Shown here piece after piece: positions 2,097-40,863 of a DNA stretch of 41,199 nucleotides. The notes below the pieces were generated by a model. The model saw only the letters and a list, made by a program, of their open reading frames with translations, ran no database searches and was not told the origin of the DNA. The first letter of the stretch is position 1; each line of letters begins with the position of its first letter. The position numbers and the translations under genes were made by a program. Source of the stretch: Octopus sinensis. Lineage: Eukaryota. Location: contig NW_021835309.1 of assembly GCF_006345805.1 (NCBI RefSeq), forward strand, positions 1 to 41,199. Reading direction: 5' to 3'.

Positions 2097-2141
<45 letters not shown>

Positions 2142-2294
2142 GAGCTTCTTTCAGTTTCCGTCTACCAAATCCACTCACAAGGCTTTGGTCGACCCGAGGC
2201 TATAGTAGAAGACACTTGCCCAAAGTGCCACGCAGTGGGACTGAACCTGGAACCATGTGGTTGGTAAGCAAGCTACTTACCACACAGCCACTCC
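1866..2294 (-). mobile_element. tRNA-derived SINE family A (internal (TA)n/(TG)n microsatellite, (GTAAAAGA)n tail), nested in the mariner relic
   Basis: Reverse complement starts ggagtggctgtgtggtaag with a B-box-like ggttcagtccc. Many homologous copies occur in the window. Confidence 0.9.
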
Positions 2295-2864: not shown

Positions 2865-3059
2865 TAAACTGTTATCTACCAGCCATAATCTAGCTGGTAT
2901 TTTTTTTTAAATACTTTTATTTTTGGATGGGATGTTGTGCTTTCTCTTCTTTTTATGCAAACTGTCAAATGTAGCTCGAACACCCTGTATAATGTCGGAA
3001 TGGTCACAGTTGGAAATCCTTTAATCGTAGGCTTTGTTCAATAAGGATTGACCTGCAGC

Positions 3060-4230
3060 TTAAACAATAGCAATTATACCATCAGCAACAACATTACCTT
3101 CAAGTCCGTCACCACAAACTTCACCACCATCGCAACCATCACTACCACCACCACAAACATCACCTTCACTACCACCACCATAAACACCACTGCAAACACT
3201 ACCACCACCATCACCAAAACTAACAACATATCACCATCATTACTACTACCACCAAAACTACCACCAACACCTCTGATACCACCTCCACTACCTCCATTAC
3301 TACCAATCGTAAGCATCATTTCCCATCACAACCATTACCACTGACATTGTCACCAACATCACCATCACCATTACATCTACCATTGCTAAATCCACCACCA
3401 CCGCCATCACTAGCACTACTACTGCCGTACCCATTATCAACAACACCATCATCAGCACCACTACAAACACCAACACCACCACCACCATCAACATATCTAC
3501 CAACGTCATCTTCGACAACATCGCTAGCACTGCCACCAACACTATCAATAGCATCACCATGACCTCTACTACTACCAACACGACAACCACCAGGCACACC
3601 ATTACTACTACCACCACCTTCGCCGCCACCACCACTGCCGTCACCACCACCACCACCACTGCCGTCACCACCACCACCGCCGCCACTACCACCACCAATA
3701 TTACCATCGACACTACTAAGGAGCGACACCACCATTGCCACCAACACTACAGGCGGCCCCGACATAACTACCACCAGCCCCACCAAAATCACCACTACCA
3801 CCACCACCAAAACCACCAGTACCACTACCGACTCCACCAAAACCAACCACTACCACCACTACCATCACCACCATTACCACCCACACATCAGAGACTACCA
3901 TTACCACGCACACATCAGACACCACCATTACCACCTACACATTAGACGGCCCCGATACAACCATCACTACCATCAGCACCACCTCCACCACCACTGCCAC
4001 CACCACTAATGTTACCATCGACACTACCAGCGAGCAACACTGTCATTGTCACCAACACCACAGGTGGCCTCCAACACAACTACCACCACCACCACCACCA
4101 CCACTACCACCACCAATACCACCACCAAAACCACCACTACCATCACCACCACCAAAATCACTACTACCACCGCTACCATCACCAACACCAGTAAACCCAC
4201 CACTGACAACCCACTTTTAATACCACTACC
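3060..4230. repeat. Cryptically simple (ACC/CAC/ACT)n low-complexity tract
   Basis: Degenerate trinucleotide repeats. ORFs in all frames are poly-T/H/P/V/G. Confidence 0.85.
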
Positions 4231-4463
4231 ATAATCCTAACCTCCAATTATATATCCTATGAAGAGAGAACAACAACAACTAAAATAAACAGCAATATGG
4301 TGAGATGGAGGCGATGGTTCCAACGTTGACGAGGGGGATGGAATGAACAGGTCCTGCGATTGGATGAAGGTGGATCAAGGTTTTATTTCACCTCATCACA
4401 AAAGATTAACTTGGCTTCGGAGAGATGCCAGTACTTGACAACGTTTTCCATATTCACTGACAT

Positions 4464-4935
4464 TCTCTCTCTCTCTCTCACTCATTTCCTACCCCCTCTC
4501 TCTCTCTCTATCTTTCTTTCTTTCTCTCTCTCTTTCTCTCTCTTTCTCTCAATATCTCTTTCTTTCAATATCTCTGTCTCTCCTCCTCACTCTCTGTCTC
4601 ACTGACTCACCTTTTCTCTTCCTCTTACTGCCTGTGTCGCTTTCTTTCTTTATTGCCCTCAAGCTCTCTCTCTCTCTCACTACCTTACCGTTTCTCTTTT
4701 CTCTCACTGCATCTGTCTCTTTCTCTCCTTCTCTCTTTCTCTCTTTCTCACCCTCTCTCACTTACACAGAGTCGTTCTTTCTCTTTCTCTCACAGTCTTT
4801 CTCACTTTCTCTCATTTTCTCTGTCTCCCACTCTTTTTGCATCGCGTCTGACTCCCCCTCTCTCTCTCTCTCTTCCTTTCTCTCTCCCTCGCTCTCTCCC
4901 TCTCTTTGTTTCTCTTTCTCTCTCTATCGCTCTTT
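4464..4935. repeat. Degenerate (CT)n polypyrimidine tract
   Basis: Direct inspection. Confidence 0.9.
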
Positions 4936-4999
4936 CTCTGGTATCGTTTATGTCGACTCATACGAAATTTCCAGAAAATTTTATTTCAAACTAAAACCA

Positions 5000-6074
5000 C
5001 TACCAACAACAGTAAGTACAACAGAGCGAAAATTACATCAATACAACAATAACAAAACAACAACAACTACTACTACTACTACCATCACAAGTACCACCAC
5101 CACCAACGCTACCAACACTACCACCACCACTATCACCAACTGCAACACCACCGCCACAACCAACACCAACGCCACCACCACCATCACCACTACTACCAAC
5201 ACCACCAACACCAATACCACCACCATCACCATCACTAACACCACCAGCAACACCACCATCATCACTACCACCACCAGCACTAACAACAACACCAAAATTA
5301 ACTTACAACAAGTGTTACTACTACAATCACATGTACCACCAACACCACCAGTACCACTACCACCACCACAACCACCAACACCACTTGCTACTACTGCTGT
5401 AGCAGCAGCAGAAATGATAACATTAACAAAAAGAAAAAAACCCAAAACCCAAAACCACGAACACGAACACCACCACCAGCAACAACAACAACATCAACGG
5501 CAATAATTACTACAACAGCAACATTTTTAAACAACCCCTGATACTGCAACAACAACAATAATAACAAGTAAAACCACCGCTGCCGCCACAGCCACCAGCA
5601 CCACCACCACAACAACAACAACAACAACGATAGGAAACATAACGAACGGTGATGTCAACAAAATACAGAAAGACAACAGCAATGTGCAAAACACAACAAT
5701 AACAAGAATAACATCAACAACAACAACAACAGCCATAAACACAACAACATTGGCAGGAACCACTTATACAATGCAATAATGGAGAATATAGAGAATACGA
5801 CAACGGGCATATAAACAAATAACAACACACGACAATTAAAACAACAACAACAACAACAACAGCACCAATAATTATAATAATAATAATAATAATAATAATA
5901 TAATAATAATAATTAATAATAATAATAATAAAAATAATAAAAATAATAATAATAATAATAACTAATAAAATAATAATAAAAATAATAATATATAATAAAA
6001 ATAATAATAATAAAAAATAATAATAATAATAATAATAATAATACTAATAATACATAATAATAATAATATAATAA

Positions 6075-7824: not shown

Positions 7825-7993
7825 GGAGTGGCTGTCTGGTAAGTAGCTTGCTAACCAACCACATGGTTCCGGGTTCAGTCCCACTGCGTGACATCTTGGG
7901 CAAGTGTCTTCTGCTATAGCCCCGGGCCGACCAATGCCTTGTGAGTGGATTTGGTTGACGGAAACTGAAAGAAGCCTGTCGTATATATGTATA

Positions 7994-8029
<36 letters not shown>

Positions 8030-8224
8030 TCCCCCTAGCATTGCTTGACAACCGATGCTGGTGTGTTTACGCCCCCGTCACTTAGCGGTTCCGCAAAAGA
8101 GACCGATAGAATAAGTACTGGGCTTACAAAGAATAAGTCCCGGGGTCGATTTGCTCGACTAAAGGCGGTGCTCAAGCATGGCCGCAGTCAAATGACTGAA
8201 ACAAGTAAAAGAGAAAGAGAAAGA
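7825..8224 (+). mobile_element. SINE family A, full length
   Basis: ggagtggctgtctggtaag head, gccttgtgagtggatttgg..gaaactgaaagaagcc central block, ggcggtgctcaagcatggccgcagtcaaatgactgaaac tail. Confidence 0.92.
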
Positions 8225-8328: not shown

Positions 8329-8571
8329 TGCAGTATTCTGTTAACAGCTTCTCTTTTACTCTTACTTTTTTACTTGTTTCAGTCATTTGACTGTGGTCAT
8401 GCTGGAGTACCGCTTTTAGTCGAGCAAATCGACCCCAGGACTTATTCTTTGTAAGCCTAGTACTTATTCTATCGACTTCTTTTCCCGAACCGTTAAGTTA
8501 CGGGGACGTAAACCCACCAGCATCGGTTGTCAAGTGATGTTGGTGGGACAAACACAGACACACAAACATAT

Positions 8572-8854: not shown

Positions 8855-9245
8855 GAACTCCTTGATTCGGATTTGGGAACACTGAAAGTGGGAGCATACC
8901 CTTTTGGCTTCTTATCACTTCCGGAAATCTGCTCGAACTAACAGTGCTAACAAATTCAAAATATGCAAGCGAAGAATTTCTGCTCTCCCCTTTCCACGAA
9001 TATATATATATATATATATATATATAACTAATGTAGGATAAAAATTTTTTCGGGAAAACAATTTTATCAATGGCCCGTATATCAAAAAATATCTTTAAAG
9101 GTTAAATTTATAAATAATTTACAAGATAAGGGCAAAAGAAAAATTCTAATGTCAAATATGCCGAAAAAAAGACAAAGCTTTTCAATAACCATTATAATTT
9201 ATGCGTCTCGAAACAAACCAATAGAAATCTCAAAAAAATTCGTTA

Positions 9246-9303
9246 TTACCGTATTGGTCCAATTTCGGGGTTAATTAATAAATTGTCCCCTCTTCAGCGG
9301 TAA
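9246..9303 (-). ncRNA. Type I hammerhead ribozyme (complete consensus)
   Basis: ttaccg-CUGAAGA-GGGG..CCCC-GAA-AUUG gac CAAU-A-cggtaa. Helix I is 6 bp, helix II 4 bp G-C, helix III 4 bp. Predicted cleavage after AUA (between 9252 and 9251). Confidence 0.8.
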
Positions 9304-9401
9304 ATACGCGAGATATAAGTGATATACTTACTCATACCCATGGAAAAAGCAAGCACTAAGTCCTGAGGGCACATCTCTAGACACGTGTGATTCGAACTAG
9401 A

Positions 9402-9466
9402 ATTTGCCTCTGAAGAGGGGAAAATTTATTATTAATTAACCCCGAAATTGGACCAATACGATAATA
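9402..9466 (+). ncRNA. Type I hammerhead, second copy with mismatched helix I
   Basis: Same core CTGAAGA (9410), GGGG/CCCC, GAAATTGGACCAATA. The helix I arms tttgcct/cgataa have two mismatches next to the core. Confidence 0.55.
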
Positions 9467-9730
9467 ACGAATTTTTTAGAGATTTCTATCGGTTTGTTTC
9501 GAGACGCATAAATTATAATGGTTATTGAAAAGTTTTGTCTTTTTTTCGGCATATTTGACATTAGAATTTTTCTTTTGCCCTTATCTTGTAAATTATTTAT
9601 ATATATATATACATATATACGACGGGCTTCTTTCAGTTTCCGTCTACCAAATCCACTCACAAGGCTTTGGTCAGCCCGAGGCTATAGTAGAAGACACTTG
9701 CCCAAGGTGCTACGCAGTGGGACTGAACCC

Positions 9731-10555
9731 ACTGATTTTTTTATGGGATGTTGTAGCTTCGTCCCATATGATCAAAGAACATTAGATTGAATGGCAGATT
9801 CTATGCTGCGTGAGCTGTTCGACCTTCTGGGAGTAATGTTGCTGCAATTTCAGAGCTCGCTACAGCCAAGGCTATTTCCTTTTTCTGCTGAACTTTGGCT
9901 AGCACTAAATTTGTAACAAAAGTTTTTCCAGTTCCTCCTGGTGCGTCTAAAAAATATAATATTCTTCTCTTATGTGTCACTTGGTTAATGATTGTTGTAT
10001 ATGCAAGTTGTTGGTCTGGCAAAAGTTTCGGGACATTTTCTTCAAGGAATTTTATTAATGAATCTATATCATATGAAGTTTCTCGCAAAAATTCTGTGAT
10101 CAAATTATTCACTTCATTTCGATGAGTTTCAGATAAGCCAAACTTGCTGAGATCCTCTCCTCCCATTGAGACAACACGATCTTCAATATCAACCATCGTT
10201 GAATCCTATTTCCCTCTCTGGGAATCTTAATTGTGCTTCATATTTGTAGTCTTCTGATAAATCATTCTTCTATTTGTGCCACAACGCTAATGAATTACTT
10301 ATTCCACAATTCAGGAGAAGAAATGCCAAAAGATCTCTCAAAGAAATAGGTATGCGTGACACTGAAGCCTCAGTCACGGTTCTATCCCACTGATTGTCAT
10401 CAAATTCAAGGCTAAACAGGTTTCTCTATAAGTTCGAACAGTTTGACCACCATCGTTTTTAGGAAGGAGAAGGCAGTCGCTCCTCTTATTTCATGAAGAA
10501 GCAGCCTCAAAAAGAACATTCATAGGGACACGAATGCATAGACTAAACTCTTCTG
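9731..10555 (-). pseudogene. Helitron RepHel fragment (Pif1-family helicase)
   Basis: ORF 9801-10196 has Walker A LDAPGGTGKT and AVASSEIAATLLPEGRTAH. Downstream LIIWDEATTSHKK is Walker B. Upstream frameshifted LRLLLHEIRG...TYRETCLAL...DDNQWD...LSEDY is typical Helitron linker sequence. Confidence 0.92.
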
Positions 10556-11211
10556 ATTGTCGAGTCAAATAATTTTATACTTGGATGACCCTCTTCGTTA
10601 TCTCTTCTACAGTTATACACACACACACAACGATACACATGTTATTGTGTATGTCATTATATTACTCATATGGTATACCTACAAAAGAGTGCCCCACCGA
10701 ATTTGTTTCTTCCTAAGTTTGGGGATAATGGGTATTTTCAAATGAAAAGTTGTACAATTATATTGAAGTGAGATAGGGAAATGACAGCTGACCTCATAAA
10801 TTCTGATGTGGCATACGTGAAACAAAGAAAAAATGTTGGAGTGAAATCTAAGTTACGGTTTCTATTCTGAAGGTATACAGTGAATAAAACGAAAGTGACC
10901 TTCTACGGTTTCTATTGTGAAGATAGGCAGCGAAAAAAAAGAAAACTGATCTTCTATAGATACAAATATAGAACGAATGCAAAATAATACTTATTACGTA
11001 ATACTTATAGCAATATGAAGTAATGGAGCTTATTACAGTTATACACCCCCTCATACACACCTATGTTATTATCTGCATCGTTATATTACGCATATGGCAT
11101 ACCCACAGAAGAGTGCCCCACCGTATTTTGATATAAAATGAAGAAATATAATAATCCTATAAAAATCATGTCCCTTTGGCAGGTTATTTATTTATTATTA
11201 ATTTAGTTAAA

Positions 11212-12771
11212 TTTGGTTTCCCAGCAATTCTCCTCAGATCGTGCAAACGTGCCCTGGCAAAACCACTACAGATTTTCCTCCAGTTTTTTGCAAATGGCAA
11301 GCTGCCAAGGAAACAAAAGGAGGGAATAATATGCCCAATCCATAAAGAAGGAAGAAGAACTTATGCAAAAAATGATAGGCCTATCTTTCTGATTTCACGC
11401 ACCAGCGAAGTCATGGAACGAATAATCAGAAGGAAACTAATCGCATTCCTTGAAGGAAACAACTTGCTAAGTGATACCCTGCATGGTTTTCGACACAGTT
11501 CCTACAATACTATGACTGAGTGTTGAAGCAGTTACTATAGAACTCAAATGTGGATGTAATATACCTCGACTTTGCAAAATCTTTTGATAAAGTTGATCAT
11601 GGTATGATATGCCACAGACTGCGCGATTTTGTCATAGCTGGGAGACTTGGAGGGTGTTTACATGACTTTCTGAAAGATAGAAGTCTGGCAGTGGTGGCCG
11701 ATGGGGCCACCTCAAAGGAAACACAAATAGTTAGTGGTGTCCCACAGGGTACTCTCTTGGGGCCACTGCTTTTCATAAAGGCCCCCTCAGATATGCTCTC
11801 AACTTCCCAGATAGGCACCGTTGCTAGCTACGCAGACGATATGAAAGTCTTGCAGAAAATACAAAACCCTAGCCATATTTGCACGCCTGCAGCAGAAGTT
11901 GGATGCAGTTTACAGGTGGGTTGAGGACAATAATATGCAGTTTAATGCTGGACAATACCAAGCCCTGCGCTACCAGCACCCAAAACTGAACGCAAATCTT
12001 AAAGGGTACACCGACCCAGGTGGGGATTACAATCCCAGAACATAACTTAGTCGTGACTTGGGTATCGATATGTGTGATGATACATCTTTTCAAGTGCACA
12101 TAAGCAACACGGCGACAAAGTGCAGACGGCTGACTGGATCCTGCGAGCCTTCAAAACCAGAGAGAAGGAAATCATGATGGTCCTCTGGAGGACATTCGTC
12201 CTCAGCCGCTTTGACTACTGCTCCCAACTATGGTCACCCAACAATGTAAAATTAACAGCGGATCTTGAAGTAATCCAGCGAAACTTCACAAAGAAGAGTG
12301 TCTCATCGCAACAGCTCAGCTACTGGGAAAGGCTAAAACAGATAAGACTCTACTCCCTGGAGCGAAGGCGTGAGAGATATGCAGTAATATACATCTGGAA
12401 GATCCTGGAAGGGATTTGCCAAATTTTGGCATTTAAAGCTACACAAATGCCAGAACGGGTTGCCACTGCATAGTGCCAAAGATCTCAACAATGCTGTCGC
12501 TCTTCAGGACCAGTTACTGCAACAGCCTGGCTTTCAGGGGCTCATGGCTTTTCAATATTCTCCCAAAGAGCCTGAGGGACCTACACAAAGTGGATGTAGG
12601 TGTTTTCAAAACAAAACTGGATCTCTTCCTGCCGAGAGTCCCAGAGGAACCCACCACGCTGCAGGAGGCGCAAATGAGGGCTGCGACATCACACTCTCTT
12701 ATTCACCAAATGTCACATATCAGAGGAGGTCCCAGCATGGTTGCAGCGTTGAGTTGAAACCGATGAAAAAA
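11212..12771 (+). mobile_element. 5'-truncated CR1/L2-group non-LTR retrotransposon, RT pseudogene
   Basis: PIHKEG..RPIFL, HGFR, DVIYLDFAKSFDKVDH, SGVPQGTLLGPLLF, YADD, and C-terminal YCSQLWSP..LYSLERRRERY. Several frameshifts; short A tail. Confidence 0.95.
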
Positions 12772-13005
12772 TAGTGGTACGTAAATCGATAAAAATTATT
12801 TTCCCTTAGACTCTTCATTTATTTGTGAAATGCGACTTTCTACATGTTGGAAAAGGTCAATAGCTCTCTTCTGAGGGCCGCTAGATACTCGGGACCACTT
12901 CCATTGTCTTCGGCGTGAAATTTTACACAAGAATTAGCTTTTAGCTTTTATATCCATGCTGAAGTTTTCTTTCTATTCGCGGACACACATACGCACACAT
13001 ACACA

Positions 13006-13041
<36 letters not shown>

Positions 13042-15527: not shown

Positions 15528-15678
15528 TTTCTTTTCTACTCTAGGTACAATGCCCGAAATTTTGGGGGAGGGGACCAGTCGATTTGAACGACCCCAGTAC
15601 GCAACTGGTACTTAATTAATCGACCCCGAAAGGATGAAAAGCAAAGTTGACCTCGGCGGAATTTGAACTTAGAACGTA
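15528..15678 (-). mobile_element. SINE family B, 5'-truncated, with 15-bp TSD
   Basis: Reverse complement has B box gttcaaattcc and ttcatcctttcggggtcgat..aagtaccag. TSD aatagcaataaatat at 15513-15527 and 15679-15693. Homologous to 23133-23361. Confidence 0.88.
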
Positions 15679-15755
15679 AATAGCAATAAATATATTGACG
15701 CTTACAACAATGGCAACGCTATTACTACATGTATATATGCATGTATGTATGTCTA

Positions 15756-16169: not shown

Positions 16170-16962
16170 CCTGAATTTGAGTCCCAGAGCCTAAAATAGT
16201 GAGGGACCTGGGTATCGACATGAGTGATGATACCTCTTTCGAAGTGCACATTACCAGGATGGTGACAAAGTGCAGACGACTGGCTGCCGGGATCCTGAGA
16301 ACATTCAGAACCAGAGATAAGGAAACCATGATGGTCCTCTGGAAGACATTCGTCCTCAGCCACCTGGATTACTACCGCAGCTATGGTCACCCACTAGTGT
16401 GAAATTAACAGCGGACCTTGAAGCAATCCAAAGAAGGTTGACAAAGAAGAGCGTCTCTTTGCAACTGCTCAGCTACTGGAAAGGCTGAAACAGCTAAGGC
16501 TCTACTCCCTGGAGAGAAGGCTGGAGAGGTATGCAGTTATATACATCTGGAAGATCCTGGAAGGAATTGTGCCAGATTTTGGCTTTGAAAGCTACACCAA
16601 TGCTAGAACGGGACGACACTGCATAGTGCCAAAGATCACAGCAACGCCATCGCGCTTCAGGATCAGTTACTGCAACAGCCTGGGTTTCAGGAACCAACAG
16701 CTTTTCAATATTCTCCCAAAGAACCTGCGGAATCTGCACAAAGTAGATGTAGGCGTTTTTAAGTCAAAGTTGGACCTCTTCCTGTCGAGAGTCCCAGATG
16801 AACCAATATCACAGCAAGAACTGCAAATGAGGGTAGCTACATCAAACTCCATTCTTCACCAAGTGCCACATATTGGAGAAGGCTCTCAGTAGTAACAGTG
16901 TAGCAAAACGGCGGTACATCAGTATGGCCGCAGCTTTGAGCTGAAACTACAGCAAAAAAAAA
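16170..16962 (+). mobile_element. Second 5'-truncated CR1-type LINE (3' end of RT plus tail)
   Basis: Colinear with 12030-12771 (DLGIDMSDD..MMVLWKTFVLS..YSLERR..). Ends in an A10 tail. Confidence 0.93.
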
Positions 16963-22949: not shown

Positions 22950-23132
22950 CGACAAGGCGAGGATGGAGGAAAGAAATATTATAGAGTGACATCAAAAAGA
23001 TGAAGATAATCTTACTTGGAAATGGATGCGTGGCGTTCAGTTAAATAATAATAAAAAATTATATATATATATATATATATATGTGTATGCGTGTGTATGT
23101 GTGTGTGCACGCGTGTGTGTGTGTGTATATAT

Positions 23133-23361
23133 AAGGTGAGCTGGCAGAATCGATAGCACACCGGGCGAAATGCTTAGCAGTATTTCGTCTCCCGTTATGT
23201 TCTGGGTTCAAATTCCACTGAGCTCGACTTTGCCATTCATCCTTTCGGAGTCGATTAAATAAGTACCAGTTACGCACTGGATTGGATGTAATCGACTTAA
23301 CTCCTTTGTTTGTCCTTGCTTGTCCCCTCTATGTTTATCCTCTTGTGGGCAATAAAGAAAT
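23133..23361 (+). mobile_element. SINE family B, full length
   Basis: Head aaggtgagctggcagaatcg, B box ggttcaaattcc, ttcatcctttcggagtcgattaaataagtaccag, tail gggcaataaagaaa. Confidence 0.88.
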
Positions 23362-23739
23362 ACACACACACACACATATATATATATATACATATGTATA
23401 TATATATATATTTAATTAATAAGGGTGAGAGAATTAGATACTAATTTAATAGTATATCTATTCTACACCAAGTGGCCTAGTGCTCCGAGAAACCTGGATT
23501 ATTATAATATTTTATAATATCTTATAATATTTTTACAAAATAAATATAAGAGAGTGGTCACTATATGGCTCACTCTAGCACCAGTTAATCCAAAAGGCTT
23601 CAACCACAAAAATACATGTTTCCCATGAAAGTCAGTACGATTGTTAGCTCACACGGACAGGGCACGGATGTAATCAATTGAACCACACGCGTATTTATCG
23701 TTATGGTAAAATCTGGCGTGTGATTGAGTGGATTTCATC

Positions 23740-23834
23740 CAGATAGTTTTGGCTGAGGAGCTACAAGTGGATTTTTTGTAAGTAAAATTACATTTAATTC
23801 ATTAATAGCGAAACAATTGTCCCAAAATAATCTG
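23740..23834 (+). ncRNA. Type I hammerhead ribozyme, array copy 1
   Basis: Helix I cagatagttttgg/ccaaaataatctg (13 positions, 1 mismatch, 1 G-U), CUGAGGA, helix II GCUA/UAGC with extended stem, GAA, helix III ACAAUUGU, GUC cleavage at 23821. Confidence 0.93.
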
Positions 23835-24268
23835 TATTTTTGTTATTTTTTATTTGCCCTGTCCGTGTGAGCTAACAATCGTACTGACTTTCATGGGAAA
23901 CATGTATTTTTGTGGTTGAAACCTTTTGGATTAACTGGTGCTAGAGTGAGCCATATAGTGACCACTCTCTTATATTTATTTTGAAAAATATTATAATATA
24001 TTATAAAATATATAATAATCCAGGTTTCTCGGAGCACTAGGCCACTTGGTGTAGAATAGATATACTATTAAATTAGTATCTAATTCTCTCACCCTTATTA
24101 ATTAATATAATTTGCTGCATTATTTCTAAATGCTGTATTTGTTTTCCGTGAAAATTTGGCGCGCGTGTTGTGGGGCATTTGAATTATAACGTCGGATGTA
24201 ATCAATTGAACCACACGCGTATTTATCGTTATGGTAAAATCTGGCGTTGTGATTGAGTGGATTTCATC

Positions 24269-24364
24269 CAGATAGTTTTGGCTGAGGAGCCTACAAGTGG
24301 ATTTTTTTGTAAGTAAAATTACATTTAATTCATAATAGCGAAACAATTGTCCCAAAATAATCTG
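24269..24364 (+). ncRNA. Type I hammerhead, array copy 2 (one extra C in helix II)
   Basis: Same motif; C17 at 24351. Confidence 0.85.
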
Positions 24365-24802
24365 TATTTTTGTTATTTTTTATTTGCCTGTCCGTGTGAG
24401 CTAACAATCGTACTGACTTTCATGGGAAACATGTATTTTTGTGGTTGAAACCTTTTGGATTAACTGGTGCTAGAGTGAGCCATATAGTGACAACTCTCTT
24501 ATATTATTTTGTAAAAATATTATAATATATTATAAAATATTATAATAATCCAGGTTTCTCGGAGCACTAGGCCACTTGGTGTAGAATAGATATACTATTA
24601 AATTAGTATCTAATTCTCTCACCCTTATTAATTAATTATAATTATGCTGCATTTATTTCTAAATGCTGTATTTGTTTTCCGTGAAAATTTGGCGCGCTGT
24701 TAGTTGGGGCATTTGAATTATAACGTCGGATTGTAATCAATTGAACCACACGCGTATTTATCGTTATGGTAAAATCTGGCGTGTGATTGAGTGGATTTCA
24801 TC

Positions 24803-24897
24803 CAGATAGTTTTGGCTGAGGAGCTACAAGTGGATTTTTTTGTAAGTAAAATTACATTTAATTCATTAATAGCGAAACAATTGTCCCAAAATATCTG
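24803..24897 (+). ncRNA. Type I hammerhead, array copy 3
   Basis: Same motif; C17 at 24885. Confidence 0.9.
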
Positions 24898-25338
24898 TAT
24901 TTTTGTTATTTTTTATTTTCCCTGTCCGTGTGAGCTAACAATCGTACTGACTTTCATGGGAAACATGTATTTTTGTGGTTGAAACCTTTTGGATTAACTG
25001 GTGCTAGAGTGAGCCATATAGTGACCACTCTCTTATATTATTTTGTAAAAATATTATAATATATTATAAAACTATTATAATATCCAGGTTTCTCGAGCAC
25101 TAGGCCACTTGGTGTAGAATTAGATATACTATTAAATTAGTATCTAATTCTCTCACCCTTAATTAATATATGATTATTATTTTATGCTGCATTTGTTTTC
25201 TAAATGCTGTATTGTTTTCCGTGAAAATTGGCGCGCTGTTAGGTGGGGCATTTGAATTATAACGTCGGATGTAATCAATTGAACCACACGCGTATTTATC
25301 GTTATGTAAAATCTGGCGTGTGATTGAGTGGATTTCAT

Positions 25339-25431
25339 CAGATAGTTTTGGCTGAGGAGCTACAAGGGATTTTTTGTAAGTAAAATTACATTTAATTCAT
25401 AATAGCGAAACAATTGTCCCAAAATAATCTG
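25339..25431 (+). ncRNA. Type I hammerhead, array copy 4
   Basis: Same motif; C17 at 25418. Confidence 0.9.
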
Positions 25432-25859
25432 TATTTTTGTTATTTTTTATTTTCCCTGTCCGTGTGAGCTAACAATCGTACTGACTTTCATGGGAAACAT
25501 GTATTTTTGTGGTTGAAACCTTTGGATTAACTGGTGCTAGAGTGAGCCATATAGTGACCACTCTTATTATTTATTTTGTAAAAATATTATAATATATTAT
25601 AAAATATTATAATAATCCAGGTTTCTCGGAAGCACTAGGCCACTTGGTGTAGAATAGATATACTATTAAATTAGTATCTAATTCTCCACCCTTATTAATT
25701 AATTATAATTATGCTGCATTTATTTTAAATGCGTTTTTGTTTCCGTGAAAATTTGGGCGCTGTTAGTTGGGGCATTTGAATTATAACGCGGATGTAATCA
25801 ATGAACCCACACGTATTTATCGTTATGCGAAAATCTGGCGTGTGATTGAGTGGATTTCA

Positions 25860-25955
25860 CAGATAGTTTTGGCTGAGGAGCTACAAGTGGATTTTTTGTA
25901 AGTAAAATTACATTAATTCATTAATAGCGAAACAATTGTCCCCAAAAATAATCTG
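25860..25955 (+). ncRNA. Type I hammerhead, array copy 5
   Basis: Same motif; C17 at 25940; homopolymer indels in the 3' arm of helix I. Confidence 0.87.
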
Positions 25956-26388
25956 TATTTTTGTTATTTTTTATTTGCCCTGTCCGTGTGAGCTAACAAT
26001 CGTACTGACTTTCATGGGAAACATGTTTTTGTGGTTGAAACTTTTGGATTAACTGGTGCTAGAGTGAGCCATGTAGTGACCCACCTCTTATATTTATTTG
26101 GTAAATATTATAATAATATATAAAATATTATAATAATCCAGGTTTCTCGGAGCACTAGGCCACTTGGTGTAGAATAGATATACTATTAAATTAGTATCTA
26201 ATTCTCTCACCCTTATTAATTATTATAATTATGCTGCATTTATTTCTAAATGCTGTATTTGTTTTCCGTGAAAATTTGGCGCGCTGTTAGTTGGGGCATT
26301 TGAATTATAACGTCGGATGTAATCAATTGAACCACACGCGTATTTATCGTTATGGTAAAATCTGGCGTGTGATTGAGTGGATTTCATC

Positions 26389-26482
26389 CACATAGTTTTG
26401 GCTGAGGAGCTACAAGTGGATTTTTTGTAACTAAAATACATTTAATTCATTAATAGCGAAACAATTGTCCCAAAATAATCTG
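26389..26482 (+). ncRNA. Type I hammerhead, array copy 6
   Basis: Same motif; C17 at 26469. Confidence 0.9.
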
Positions 26483-26628
26483 TATTTTTGTTATTTTTTA
26501 TTTGCCCTGTCCGTGTGAGCTAACAATCGTACTGACTTTCATGGGAAACATGTATTTTTGTGGTTGAACCTTTTGGATTAACTGGTGCTAGAGTGAGCCA
26601 TATAGTGACCACTCTCTTATATTTATTT

Positions 26629-26660
<32 letters not shown>

Positions 26661-26955
26661 TTAAATCACAATATATGGATTCTGGTAGTCTGGTAGTACT
26701 CACAAAGAAAAGGCTCCTTAATGTATCTTTCTACAAAACATATGGAATGTATAGTAGGATACACAGACTCTCTTTCACCTGAGGACGTGGCTTAAATTCT
26801 GCATTACTTTGCAGGACTTCGTGCTTTGCTTTAATGTAGACGTAAGTAATCTAGTTGTTATTAAATATAATAATATAAAATAATTACGTTTCTATCAGAA
26901 TTTTCTTACTATTTAATAAACTTTCATCAAACTATTTCTCTGTCATTTATGACAG

Positions 26956-28042: not shown

Positions 28043-28174
28043 ATGGATGTATGATAACAAGTTTGCTTTTCAACCACATGGTTCCGTGGTATCTTGGGCA
28101 AATGTTTTCTACTACAGTCTCAGACAAAAGCCTTGTAAGCCAATTTGGTAGACGGAAACAAGAACAAGCCCGTC

Positions 28175-30080: not shown

Positions 30081-30403
30081 TACTATAGCCTCGGGCCGTC
30101 CAAAGCCTTGTGAGTGGATTTGGTAGACGGAAAATGAAAGAAGCCCGTCGTATATATGTATATATATATATATGTATGTGTGTGTATATGTTTGTGTGTC
30201 TGTGTTTGTCCCCCCAACATCGCTTGACAACCGATGCTGGTGTGTTTACGTCCCCGTAACTTAGCGGTTCGGCAAAAAAAAGACCGATAGAATAAGTACT
30301 AGGCTTGCAAAGAATAAGTCATGGGGTCGATTTGCTCGACTAAAAGGCGGTGCTCCAGCATGGCCACAGTCAAATGACTGAAACAAATAAAAGAGTAAAA
30401 GAG
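30081..30403 (+). mobile_element. SINE family A, 5'-truncated
   Basis: High similarity to 7910-8220; gtaaaagag tail. Confidence 0.9.
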
Positions 30404-36395: not shown

Positions 36396-36467
36396 CACAG
36401 CACCAGCCTTTCATCCTCAGAAGACAGGAGGTTGATTAAAGATAATACCAAATTTCCTACCCTTACT

Positions 36468-36988
36468 TATTCTTTTATTCTTTTACTTGCTTCAGTCATT
36501 TGACTGCGGCCTTGTTGGAGCACCGCCCTGAAGGGTTTCAGTCGAACAAATAGATTTCAGACGAACAAATCACTTTTTTAAAGCTTGGTACTTATTCTAT
36601 CGGTCTCTTTTGACAAACTCCTAAATTACGGGGACGTAAACACACCAACGCCCGTTGTCAAGTGGTGATGGGTAACAAACACAGACACAAGGATACGCAC
36701 ACATAGATACCTAGATACATATATACATATATGGGTGTGTATACATGTATACTTATACGACAGGCTACTTTCAGTTTCCGCCTATCAAATTCACTGACAA
36801 GACATATATATATATATATAATATATATATATATTATATATATATACGACGGGGTTCTTTTCAGTTTCCATCTATCAAATCCACTAATAAGGCTTTGGTC
36901 GGCCCGAGGCTATAGTAGAAGACACTTGCCGAAGGTGTCACGCAGTGGGACTGAACACGGAAACATGTAGTACTGAACCCGGAACCAT
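36468..36988 (-). mobile_element. SINE family A with internal partial duplications
   Basis: The tatacgac..tttcagtttcc..ctatcaaat block occurs twice (~36766 and ~36843), and ctgaac.cggaa occurs twice at the head. Confidence 0.85.
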
Positions 36989-40670: not shown

Positions 40671-40863
40671 TTTTCTTTTACTTGTTTGAGCCGCTTGACT
40701 GTGACCATGCTAGAGTACCGCCTTTAGTCGAATAAATCGATCGCAAGACTTATTCCTCGTAAGCCTAGTACTTTTTATCGATCTCTTTTGGCGAACCGCT
40801 AAGTTACAGGGACGTAAGCACACTAATATCGGTTGTCAAGCGATGGCAGAGGAATAAACACAG
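40671..40863 (-). mobile_element. SINE family A 3' half
   Basis: ttttcttttacttgtttgagccgcttgactgtgaccatgctagagtaccgcctttagtcg..gaaccgctaagttacaggg. Confidence 0.85.

What the first reader, a model, noticed from the sequence alone, without database searches (positions are those of the whole stretch)
23411..26629. Tandem ~530-bp non-coding array with six canonical hammerhead ribozymes: candidate retrozyme / self-cleaving circular-RNA system
Seen: every unit contains cagatagttttgg-CTGAGGA-GCTA..TAGC-GAA-ACAATTGT-C-ccaaaataatctg. This is a type I hammerhead with all conserved core nucleotides, a G10.1-C11.1 pair, a GUC site and a 13-position helix I. The six sites are 522-534 nt apart, and no ORF is shared by the units. 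Established: tandem type I hammerhead repeats (newt satellite 2, schistosome SM-alpha, cricket pDo500, metazoan non-LTR retrozymes) are transcribed as multimers that self-cleave to monomers, which can circularise. Inference: one + strand transcript would release five ~530-nt monomers starting ccaaaauaaucug and ending gaaacaauuguc. These are longer than the few-hundred-nt units I recall for animal retrozymes, and I know no description from cephalopods.
Basis: partly seen in the sequence, partly recalled or inferred. Interest (0 to 1): 0.92.

Follow-up and report, generated by a model that had tools for sequence, protein, structure and literature searches.

The report
Hammerhead-ribozyme tandem repeat (octopus-like retrozyme)
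A non-coding ~534-bp repeat, present as five full and two partial head-to-tail copies plus one inverted fragment, carries a well-formed self-cleaving hammerhead ribozyme motif in each direct copy; it fits a known class of animal mobile elements ("retrozymes") that spread through small circular RNAs, and its ends look like insertions made by Penelope-like retrotransposons.

Summary
Six type I hammerhead (HHR) motifs with a complete catalytic core lie 522-534 nt apart on the + strand. A structural descriptor expects 0.005 such motifs per shuffled window. Rfam's Hammerhead_1 model aligns end to end at 28.6 bits. That is below its 34-bit gathering score because helix II is a 50-nt hairpin. The unit is 32% G+C and has no reading frame longer than 72 codons. 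As a circle it folds far better than shuffles (z = -7.6).

Both 3' ends fall in the unit's two longest A/T-only runs. Partial tandems with an inverted truncated copy in (TA)n are the published insertion signature of Penelope-like elements.

Best reading: a non-LTR retrozyme copied from a circular or multimeric RNA. The 534-nt unit is within published sizes (51-972 bp). Cleavage, transcription, circular RNA and genome-wide copy number could not be tested. It is a new member of a known kind.

The parts
23376..23411 (.). Left flanking (TA)n microsatellite, preceded by (CA)n. Presumed half of the target site.
   Evidence: Tandem-repeat table and sequence.
23412..23664 (-). Inverted, 5'-truncated partial unit matching consensus 34 to about 287-291. 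Its 3' end points outwards into the (TA)n tract. It carries no hammerhead.
   Evidence: Inverted repeats I1-I15. blastn places consensus 34-291 on 23664-23407 at 98.8% identity with 0 gaps. Alignment row invArm_rc.
23665..23821 (+). First direct unit, 5'-truncated (consensus 378-534). It is joined to the inverted copy with no filler bases and holds most of hammerhead 1, up to the cleavage site.
   Evidence: blastn: 100% identity over 157 nt; sequence.
23740..23834 (+). Hammerhead 1 (helix I 5' strand to helix I 3' strand). Predicted cleavage after C23821.
   Evidence: Pattern match. Rfam RF00163 at 28.6 bits, model positions 1-45, E 1.2e-5 in a 116-nt search. Fold -25.1 kcal/mol, z -3.6.
23822..24351 (+). 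Monomer 1 (530 nt), cleavage site to cleavage site.
   Evidence: 97.6% identity to consensus.
24269..24364 (+). Hammerhead 2. Core intact; an extra C in helix II as assembled (GCCUA). Predicted cleavage after 24351.
24352..24885 (+). Monomer 2 (534 nt), the copy closest to the consensus.
   Evidence: 99.1% identity.
24803..24897 (+). Hammerhead 3. Core intact; one base missing in the helix I 3' strand. Predicted cleavage after 24885.
24886..25418 (+). Monomer 3 (533 nt).
   Evidence: 95.6% identity.
25339..25431 (+). Hammerhead 4. Predicted cleavage after 25418.
25419..25940 (+). Monomer 4 (522 nt).
   Evidence: 96.1% identity.
25860..25955 (+). Hammerhead 5. Core intact; two extra bases just 3' of the cleavage site as assembled. 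Predicted cleavage after 25940.
25941..26469 (+). Monomer 5 (529 nt).
   Evidence: 96.8% identity.
26389..26482 (+). Hammerhead 6. A G-to-C change in the helix I 5' strand is not compensated. Predicted cleavage after 26469.
26470..26632 (+). Last, 3'-partial unit (consensus 1 to about 164-185). It ends inside the unit's longest A/T-only run and merges into (TA)n.
26633..26660 (.). Right flanking (TA)n microsatellite. Presumed other half of the target site.

Best explanation
This is one insertion of a non-autonomous, hammerhead-bearing retroelement of the metazoan 'non-LTR retrozyme' type, in a genome that looks like an octopod's.

Proposed working, with each step marked:
1. The + strand of the array is transcribed as a multimer. 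The promoter is unknown. (Inferred.)
2. Each unit's type I hammerhead cleaves after GUC. It may act alone through its 2-bp helix III or, more favourably, as a double hammerhead between neighbouring units through the palindrome ACAAUUGU. This releases ~534-nt monomers that begin CCAAAAUAAUCUG and end GAAACAAUUGUC. (The motif and the folds are shown; cleavage is inferred.)
3. A host RtcB-type RNA ligase circularises the monomers into a stable, branched, ~68%-paired circle. (Inferred by analogy with coral, mussel and axolotl retrozymes.)
4. A reverse transcriptase, most likely from a Penelope-like element, primes from a break in a (TA)n microsatellite, with the target's 3' ends annealed to AU-rich stretches of the RNA. 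It runs repeatedly around the circle, or along an uncleaved multimer, and so makes the tandem cDNA.
5. Priming from the other DNA end on the opposite strand gives the inverted, 5'-truncated copy.

For steps 4 and 5 the architecture is shown in the sequence, while the mechanism and the identity of the enzyme are inferred.
For: Hammerhead:
- Six motifs have every invariant core base and type I topology.
- Chance expectation is 0.005 per window under a strict descriptor and 0.04 under a relaxed one.
- Rfam Hammerhead_1 aligns full length (positions 1-45) at 28.6 bits, E 1.2e-5.
- In the minimum-energy fold of the 95-nt motif, helices I and II form (z -3.6). They also form in the fold of the whole circular monomer.
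- Two motifs cofold into exactly a double hammerhead with an 8-bp intermolecular helix III and helix I formed in trans: -56.0 against 2 x -25.1 kcal/mol.
- The arrangement of helix I about 6-7 bp, helix II 4 bp and helix III 1-2 bp with a palindromic loop is the published 'canonical metazoan type I' architecture (PMC4209133).

Retrozyme features:
- Tandem units of 534 nt, 32% G+C, and no frame above 72 codons.
- Circular + strand energy is -146 kcal/mol against -106.7 +/- 5.1 for shuffles (z -7.6). The minus strand reaches only -112.
- These match the family description in PMC7229834 and the size range in the 2026 preprint.

Template was circular or multimeric:
- The array crosses the 534->1 cleavage junction six times.
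- Both 3' termini are internal to the monomer (consensus ~164-185 and ~287-291) rather than at consensus 534.

Penelope-like integration:
- The locus is a partial tandem with an adjacent inverted 5'-truncated copy, and both outer ends are in (TA)n.
- PMC8557442 describes this structure for Penelope-like elements and reports a (TA)n bias for the Naiad and Neptune clades.
- The two termini lie in the two longest A/T-only runs of the unit (163-200 and 276-296), which together make up 11% of the unit.
- A second, unrelated hammerhead-like element at 9027-9620 has the same geometry: head-to-head inverted copies with outer ends in (TA)n.
Against: - The Rfam score is below the family's gathering threshold (28.6 < 34). 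The motif is missed in whole-window and 3.4-kb searches.
- The 50-nt helix II is atypical, and the usual loop 1/loop 2 tertiary contacts cannot be assigned.
- There is no covariation support, because the copies are nearly identical. The one helix I substitution, in copy 6, is uncompensated.
- No RNA evidence of any kind is available.
- Only one array of this family is in the window, and no other copy could be retrieved. A protein-word search with a unit ORF found nothing. The metagenome scan gave two chance bacterial hits. The viral scan gave none. Mobility of the family is therefore not shown.
- No Penelope-like ORF was found among the window's ORFs of 90 aa or more, of which the ten scanned against Pfam gave only a PIF1 helicase relic and a reverse-transcriptase (RVT_1) fragment that I take to be a LINE relic.
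- The (TA)n flanks prevent any target-site duplication from being seen.
- The (TA)n tracts could have grown out of the element's own AT-rich segments rather than being the target.
Confidence: 0.68

Rival explanations
1. Ordinary satellite or minisatellite. A terminal repeat (pLTR) of a Penelope-like element, or a single retrozyme monomer, landed here once and was then amplified at the DNA level by unequal crossing-over or replication slippage. On this view the hammerhead is an inherited relic and no circular-RNA cycle operates today.
For: - The 2026 preprint proposes this route of local amplification of a Penelope-like terminal sequence.
- The copies are almost identical in substitutions: 0 to 5 per 534 nt. 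That fits recent DNA-level homogenisation as well as it fits a single cDNA.
- Only one array is in the window.
- There is no expression evidence.
Against: - All six cores are intact.
- The + strand folds much better than shuffles and than the minus strand, which suggests constraint at the RNA level.
- The 3' ends of the array and of the inverted copy lie at different internal positions, both in AU-rich runs next to (TA)n. One retro-insertion of a multimeric cDNA explains this simply. Later DNA amplification does not require it.
Confidence: 0.2
2. The same retrozyme life cycle, but mobilised by a LINE-type reverse transcriptase rather than a Penelope-like element. The inverted copy would arise by classical 'twin priming', and the (TA)n would act as a tail mimic.
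For: - A reverse-transcriptase (RVT_1) relic lies 11 kb away at 11176-12774; I take it to be a LINE, a call Pfam alone does not make.
- Twin priming is an established source of 5' inversions for LINE-1 (my own knowledge).
- PMC7229834 leaves LINEs open as possible mobilisers.
Against: - Tandem plus inverted truncated copies with a (TA)n bias are described as distinguishing Penelope-like elements from LINEs (PMC8557442).
- Retrozymes and Penelope-like elements co-occur, and they share terminal-repeat homology in Xenopus.
- The RT relic in the window is followed by (AC)n at 12983-13037, not (TA)n, although I did not map the relic's own 3' end.
Confidence: 0.1
3. A chance hammerhead-like motif in a repeat, or an assembly artefact such as a fold-back chimera or an over-expanded tandem.
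For: - Differences between copies are dominated by indels (57 against 14 substitutions). This shows that the array is poorly polished, so the true copy number is uncertain.
- The Rfam score is below threshold.
Against: - The expected number of such motifs by chance is 0.005 per window.
- The inversion is not a mirror image. The left arm is consensus 34-291 whereas the right side starts at consensus 378, so it is not a fold-back read.
- A second, unrelated element in the window shows the same architecture.
Confidence: 0.02

Closest known systems
Metazoan non-LTR retrozymes (Cervera & de la Pena 2020, PMC7229834), including the mussel Mytilus galloprovincialis repeats, newt satellite 2 / axolotl Rtz331 and Rtz353, and Schistosoma SM-alpha
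   Same: - Tandem, non-coding, AT-rich units, each with a type I hammerhead.
- A weak helix III (2 bp plus a palindromic tetraloop), as described for invertebrate retrozymes and for HHR_Amex2.
- A predicted highly self-paired circular monomer.
- Like the mussel hammerheads, no recognisable canonical loop 1/loop 2 contact nucleotides.
   Different: - The unit is 534 nt, against ~170-400 nt for the RNAs characterised experimentally. It is still inside the 51-972 bp range of the 2026 preprint.
- Helix II continues into a 50-nt hairpin, which pushes the Rfam score below threshold.
- The host appears to be a cephalopod, for which I found no report.
- RNA expression and circularity are untested here.
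Penelope-like elements (PLEs) and their pseudo-LTRs (Craig et al. 2021, PMC8557442; Cervera & de la Pena 2014, PMC4209133)
   Same: - Insertion architecture: a partial tandem, an inverted 5'-truncated copy directly upstream, and insertion into (TA)n.
- A type I hammerhead within the repeated part.
   Different: - There is no RT/GIY-YIG reading frame; the unit is non-coding.
- There are five full units rather than two terminal repeats flanking an ORF.
- The hammerhead is of the 'canonical' kind, with a helix III and loop, and not the minimal variant typical of metazoan PLEs.
Plant LTR retrozymes (Cervera et al. 2016, PMC4918200)
   Same: The general proposed logic: a non-autonomous element whose transcript is cut by hammerheads into a monomer that is circularised and reverse-transcribed.
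   Different: Plant elements have type III hammerheads inside ~350-bp LTRs, a tRNA-Met primer binding site, a polypurine tract, 4-bp target duplications and G+C above 55%. None of those traits fits this locus: it has type I hammerheads, 32% G+C and no terminal repeats. The primer binding site and polypurine tract were not searched for.

Membership tests
Hammerhead ribozyme, type I (Rfam RF00163) | Invariant core: C3 U4 G5 A6 N7 G8 A9, G12 A13 A14, A15.1-U16.1, H17 | tested here: met
   All six copies read CUGAGGA ... GAA-A ... U-C.
Hammerhead ribozyme, type I (Rfam RF00163) | Three helices around the core, with the open ends in helix I | tested here: met
   Helix I pairs at 12 of 13 positions, helix II is 4 bp plus an extension, and helix III is 2 bp plus AAUU. 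The Rfam alignment covers model positions 1-45.
Hammerhead ribozyme, type I (Rfam RF00163) | Score at or above Rfam's gathering threshold (34 bits) | tested here: not met
   28.6 bits in a 116-nt search. No hit at gathering score or at E<=10 over 3.4 kb. The shortfall comes from a 38-nt insertion in loop 2.
Hammerhead ribozyme, type I (Rfam RF00163) | Helices supported by compensatory changes | tested here: inconclusive
   The copies are 95.6-99.1% identical and their differences are mostly indels. The single helix I substitution is uncompensated.
Hammerhead ribozyme, type I (Rfam RF00163) | Site-specific self-cleavage | not testable with these tools
   Requires in vitro transcription.
Metazoan non-LTR retrozyme | Head-to-tail repeats of up to a few hundred bp, each with a type I hammerhead | tested here: met
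   Five full and two partial direct units of ~534 bp carry six motifs. The size is within 51-972 bp but above the 150-450 bp of the 2020 paper.
Metazoan non-LTR retrozyme | Low G+C (<45-50%) and no protein-coding capacity | tested here: met
   32% G+C. The longest stop-free frame is 72 codons. No protein shares words with the unit ORF.
Metazoan non-LTR retrozyme | Monomer predicted to form a stable, highly self-paired circular RNA | tested here: met
   Circular minimum free energy -146 kcal/mol, z -7.6 against 100 dinucleotide shuffles, 68% paired.
Metazoan non-LTR retrozyme | Expressed as linear and circular monomeric RNA | not testable with these tools
   No transcriptome data are reachable.
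Metazoan non-LTR retrozyme | Many copies dispersed in the genome (mobility) | not testable with these tools
   Only one array is in the window. No cephalopod genome is in the searchable DNA collections. The metagenome and viral scans were negative.
Penelope-like element (autonomous) | ORF encoding a reverse transcriptase and a GIY-YIG endonuclease | tested here: not met
   There is no frame above 72 codons in the unit. The flanking ORFs of 90 aa or more are microsatellite translations. Pfam hits in the window are only PIF1 and an RVT_1 fragment about 11 kb away.
Penelope-like element (insertion signature) | Partial tandem with an inverted 5'-truncated copy directly upstream | tested here: met
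   Minus-strand consensus 34-291 at 23664-23407 abuts plus-strand consensus 378 at 23665. Described for PLEs in PMC8557442.
Penelope-like element (insertion signature) | Insertion into a microsatellite, (TA)n for the Naiad and Neptune clades | tested here: met
   (TA)n at 23376-23411 and 26618-26660. Literature.
Plant LTR retrozyme | Type III hammerheads inside LTRs, with a primer binding site and a polypurine tract | tested here: not met
   The topology here is type I, and there are no LTRs, only uniform tandem units. The primer binding site and polypurine tract were not searched for separately.

The most novel reading that the evidence does not exclude
This locus would be a preserved record of how an animal retrozyme integrates. 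The two self-complementary 3' ends of a break in a (TA)n microsatellite each annealed to a different AU-rich stretch of a circular hammerhead RNA. One end primed rolling-circle reverse transcription, giving more than five units. The other end primed the inverted truncated copy. If this holds genome-wide, it would give the first structural evidence, independent of sequence homology, that Penelope-like machinery mobilises retrozymes. It would also define an active retrozyme family in cephalopods that produces ~534-nt circular RNAs.
Probability: 0.35. Interest if true: 0.65.

Novelty: new member of a known kind. Interest (0 to 1): 0.45.

Why it matters
Retrozymes are an abundant but little-studied source of small circular RNAs in animals, and how they integrate is still argued from co-occurrence and, in frogs, from sequence homology with Penelope-like elements. 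The 2020 review stated that the repeats carry no motif that reveals the helper element.

This locus shows a complete insertion with both ends. It combines an inverted truncated copy, (TA)n flanks, and termini internal to the monomer in AU-rich runs. That gives a concrete hypothesis that can be tested genome-wide: microhomology-primed, two-ended reverse transcription of a circular template by a Penelope-like enzyme.

It would also extend retrozymes to cephalopods, where RNA-level regulation is of special interest. It offers a natural hammerhead with a 50-nt helix II for testing how much stem II extension the ribozyme tolerates. None of this changes the category, because the kind of element is already known.

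Tried and rejected
1. Rfam at gathering score over the whole window found nothing, and E<=10 over 23300-26750 gave no hammerhead. Only a 116-nt search recovered Hammerhead_1. The large-window negatives are therefore an effect of the search filters and the loop 2 insertion, not evidence of absence.
2. I looked for other copies through predicted proteins, using the 70-aa ORF of monomer 5. No candidate was found.
3. A scan of JGI metagenome contigs with the hammerhead pattern gave two hits. Both are G+C-rich sequence unlike the 32% G+C unit (I take both for bacterial) and lack helix I complementarity, so both are chance matches. The viral contig scan gave none. The prokaryote genome collection and the phage, plasmid and E. 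coli collections were not searched, because they cannot hold a cephalopod repeat.
4. An exact look-up of a window RT ORF to identify the source assembly found nothing on record. The best PIF1 homologue lies on a 913-bp contig from an unnamed ENA assembly. The host is therefore inferred only from the Octopus names.
5. A relaxed hammerhead descriptor (helix III of 1 bp or more, helix I of 4 bp or more, optional bulge before 10.1) found no further motifs beyond the array and the element at 9252-9297.
6. tRNA scan: no genes found.
7. Fold-back assembly artefact: rejected, because the inversion is not a mirror image.
8. Coding repeat: rejected.
9. Plant-type LTR retrozyme: rejected on hammerhead topology and G+C content.
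10. Five literature searches for hammerheads or retrozymes in cephalopods found no report.
Full report
**Observation.** The stretch 23412 to about 26632 is a repeat with a 534-nt consensus. The pattern CTGAGGAGC-N(30-60)-GCGAAACAATTGTC occurs six times, all on the + strand, against none in 100 shuffles. Taking cleavage after the C of GUC, the sites are 23821, 24351, 24885, 25418, 25940 and 26469. This gives five full monomers of 530, 534, 533, 522 and 529 nt. They are 95.6-99.1% identical to the consensus.

The differences are 57 indel events against 14 substitutions, and 37 of the indels lie next to an identical base. The inverted arm and the first partial unit show no indels at all. Such an indel excess is not what natural divergence looks like. 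I read it as long-read assembly noise inside a tandem array, so the true copies are probably nearly identical and the copy number is uncertain.

**Hammerhead.** Each motif reads 5'-CAGAUAGUUUUGG / CUGAGGA / GCUA...UAGC / GAA / AC-AAUU-GU / C | CCAAAAUAAUCUG.
- All invariant core positions are present, together with the G10.1-C11.1, A15.1-U16.1 and C1.1-G2.1 pairs and a GUC site.
- Helix I pairs at 12 of 13 positions, with one G.U pair and one A.A mismatch at position 8.
- Helix II has 4 bp and continues, after a 2x2 internal loop, into an 8-bp and a 5-bp stem, making 50 nt in all.
- Helix III is 2 bp closed by AAUU, so ACAAUUGU is an 8-nt palindrome.

The 95-nt motif folds at -25.1 kcal/mol (z -3.6), with helices I and II in the minimum-energy structure. 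Two motifs cofold into exactly the double hammerhead of Forster et al. (cited through PMC4209133). It has an 8-bp intermolecular helix III, helix I formed in trans and the cores unpaired, at -56.0 against 2 x -25.1 kcal/mol.

A strict descriptor written for this check passes four of the six copies as assembled. The other two carry single-base insertions in helix II or next to the cleavage site. The descriptor expects 0.005 hits per dinucleotide-shuffled window. A relaxed version expects 0.04.

Rfam reports nothing at gathering score or at E<=10 over 3.4 kb. In a 116-nt search Hammerhead_1 (RF00163) aligns from model position 1 to 45 at 28.6 bits, E 1.2e-5, against a gathering score of 34. The loss comes from a 38-nt insertion in loop 2. 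The motif is therefore a structurally complete type I hammerhead with an unusually long stem II. Formally it fails Rfam's cut-off, and no covariation is available because the copies are so alike.

**The unit as an RNA.** The consensus is 32% G+C. Its longest stop-free frame, on either strand and across unit boundaries, is 72 codons. The ORFs in the individual copies differ with the indels. Folded as a circle, the + strand reaches -146 kcal/mol against -106.7 +/- 5.1 for 100 dinucleotide shuffles (z -7.6), and 68% of its bases are paired. Positions 21-90 pair with 322-375. The hammerhead's helices I and II survive as a separate arm. The minus strand reaches only -112 kcal/mol. This is the 'highly self-paired' picture described for retrozyme circles. 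The strand asymmetry points to the + strand as the functional RNA.

Relative to the consensus numbered from the cleavage site, 23664-23407 is consensus 34-291 on the minus strand (98.8% identity, no gaps). The + strand array begins directly at 23665 with consensus 378, with no filler. It ends at consensus ~164-185, at about 26632-26649.

The locus is therefore [(CA)n(TA)n] - [inverted 5'-truncated copy, 3' end outwards] - [5'-truncated unit + five units + 3'-partial unit] - [(TA)n]. The inversion is not a mirror image, because consensus 34-291 faces consensus 378 onwards. That excludes a fold-back read artefact.

Both 3' termini are internal to the monomer, and the array crosses the cleavage junction six times. 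The template was therefore an uncleaved multimer or a circle, and not a cleaved linear monomer. The two termini lie in the two longest A/T-only runs of the unit (163-200 and 276-296), which together make up 11% of it. By my own rough arithmetic, both falling there by chance has a probability of about 1%.

Because (TA)n is self-complementary, both 3' ends of a staggered break in it could anneal to any AU-rich stretch of the RNA. That would explain two primings at different internal positions on opposite strands. This last step is inference.

**Comparison with the literature.** Craig et al. (PMC8557442) describe insertions of Penelope-like elements as highly 5'-truncated partial tandems, 'often' with an inverted 5'-truncated copy directly upstream. 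They report a microsatellite bias, (TA)n for Naiads, with a (TA)n bias earlier proposed for Neptune elements. They list tandem/inverted structures and microsatellite bias as features that distinguish these elements from LINEs.

Cervera and de la Pena (PMC7229834) define metazoan non-LTR retrozymes as low-G+C tandem repeats of 150-450 bp with type I hammerheads. [quoted passage not shown] Penelope-like elements are named as the favoured helper. Their 2020 review states that the repeats show no motif that reveals the helper.

A 2026 preprint reports consensus lengths of 51-972 bp, finds that 75% of families have at most seven units, and shows homology between Xenopus retrozymes and the terminal repeats of Penelope-like elements. 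In term searches of those retrozyme papers (the review was not searched for these terms), I found no mention of inverted truncated copies or of microsatellites as retrozyme insertion targets. The unit length here is therefore not exceptional, and the kind of element is known. The clean two-ended insertion signature is what this locus adds.

**A second element in the same window.** The descriptor also hit the minus strand at 9297-9252: UUACCG / CUGAAGA / GGGG-16 nt-CCCC / GAA / AUUG-gac-CAAU / A | CGGUAA. Rfam gives it 13.9 bits, E 0.61, in an 81-nt search. It sits in a minus-strand copy at 9401-9027. A + strand copy at 9402-9607, 94% identical, faces it head to head and is cut off just 5' of CUGAAGA. 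Both outer ends are in (TA)n-like tracts, at 9000-9026 and 9598-9620. It shares no sequence with the 534-nt unit. An independent family with the same geometry argues that this architecture is a regular product of the integration machinery in this genome.

**Context and host.** There is no other copy of the unit in the window. Neighbours are SINE-like repeats, a PIF1-helicase relic at 9801-10196 and a reverse-transcriptase (RVT_1) relic, which I take to be a LINE, at 11176-12774. No Penelope-like ORF was seen among the ORFs of 90 aa or more, ten of which were scanned against Pfam. The nearest named relatives of the PIF1 relic are from Octopus bimaculoides and O. sinensis, at 48-79% identity. 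This supports a cephalopod, probably octopod, origin but does not name the species.

**Verdict.** The interpretation as a candidate retrozyme is supported at the sequence level. The most likely mechanism is transcription of the + strand, hammerhead cleavage (probably helped by dimer formation), ligation to a ~534-nt circle, and Penelope-like, target-primed, rolling-circle reverse transcription into (TA)n. Shown here: the motif, the folds, the array anatomy and the flanks. Inferred: transcription, cleavage, circularity, the enzyme and the mobility of the family.

The rivals are DNA-level amplification of a relic repeat (about 0.2), LINE-mediated mobilisation (about 0.1) and chance or artefact (about 0.02). 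The element is a new member of a known kind. It is of moderate interest, mainly for the integration signature and the apparently unreported host group.

Noticed in passing
window 9027-9620 (hammerhead-like motif 9303-9246, minus strand): A second hammerhead-like element, unrelated in sequence to the array. Its motif is CUGAAGA / GGGG..CCCC / GAA / AUUGgacCAAU-A|. It consists of two head-to-head inverted copies (minus strand 9401-9027; plus strand 9402-9607, 94% identical). The plus copy is truncated just 5' of the core, and both outer ends lie in (TA)n. Rfam Hammerhead_1 gives only 13.9 bits (E 0.61).
   Followed up: partly
window 23822-26469: The five monomers differ by 57 indel events but only 14 substitutions, and 37 of the indels are next to an identical base. 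The inverted arm and the first partial unit have no indels. This looks like unpolished long-read assembly noise inside the tandem array, so the copy number may also be unreliable.
   Followed up: yes
window 23412-24105: The inverted arm and the first direct unit form a ~253-bp inverted repeat, 95-100% complementary piece by piece, around a 190-nt spacer that contains hammerhead 1. A read-through transcript would form a long double-stranded hairpin, a possible small-RNA source.
   Followed up: no
window 23126-23356: A SINE-like element with a B-box-like GGTTCAAATTCC lies directly upstream of the array. It is flanked by microsatellites that are roughly reverse complements of each other: (TA)n(TG)n on the left and (CA)n(TA)n on the right. 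A partial copy lies at 15577-15679. ARAGORN calls no tRNA in the window.
   Followed up: partly
window 2140-2247, 7871-7980, 9621-9745, 28085-28174, 30081-30149, 36848-36956; and 1868-2071, 8023-8222, 8330-8555, 30202-30401, 36466-36682, 40676-40861: Two further short interspersed repeat families, each with six to seven copies at 72-95% identity. They are often next to microsatellites. The window is very rich in di-, tri- and tetranucleotide repeats (154 tandem-repeat rows).
   Followed up: partly
window 9801-10196 (-) and 11176-12774 (+): A PIF1-like helicase fragment (probably a Helitron relic; nearest named relatives are from Octopus bimaculoides and O. sinensis) and a broken reverse transcriptase (RVT_1), probably from a LINE. 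A related C-terminal fragment lies at 16569-16892.
   Followed up: partly
window 3000-5500: Long ACC/CCA-rich imperfect repeats with periods of 3 to 54 nt give spurious Thr/Pro-rich and Val-rich ORFs of up to 290 aa on both strands. No domain evidence was sought.
   Followed up: no
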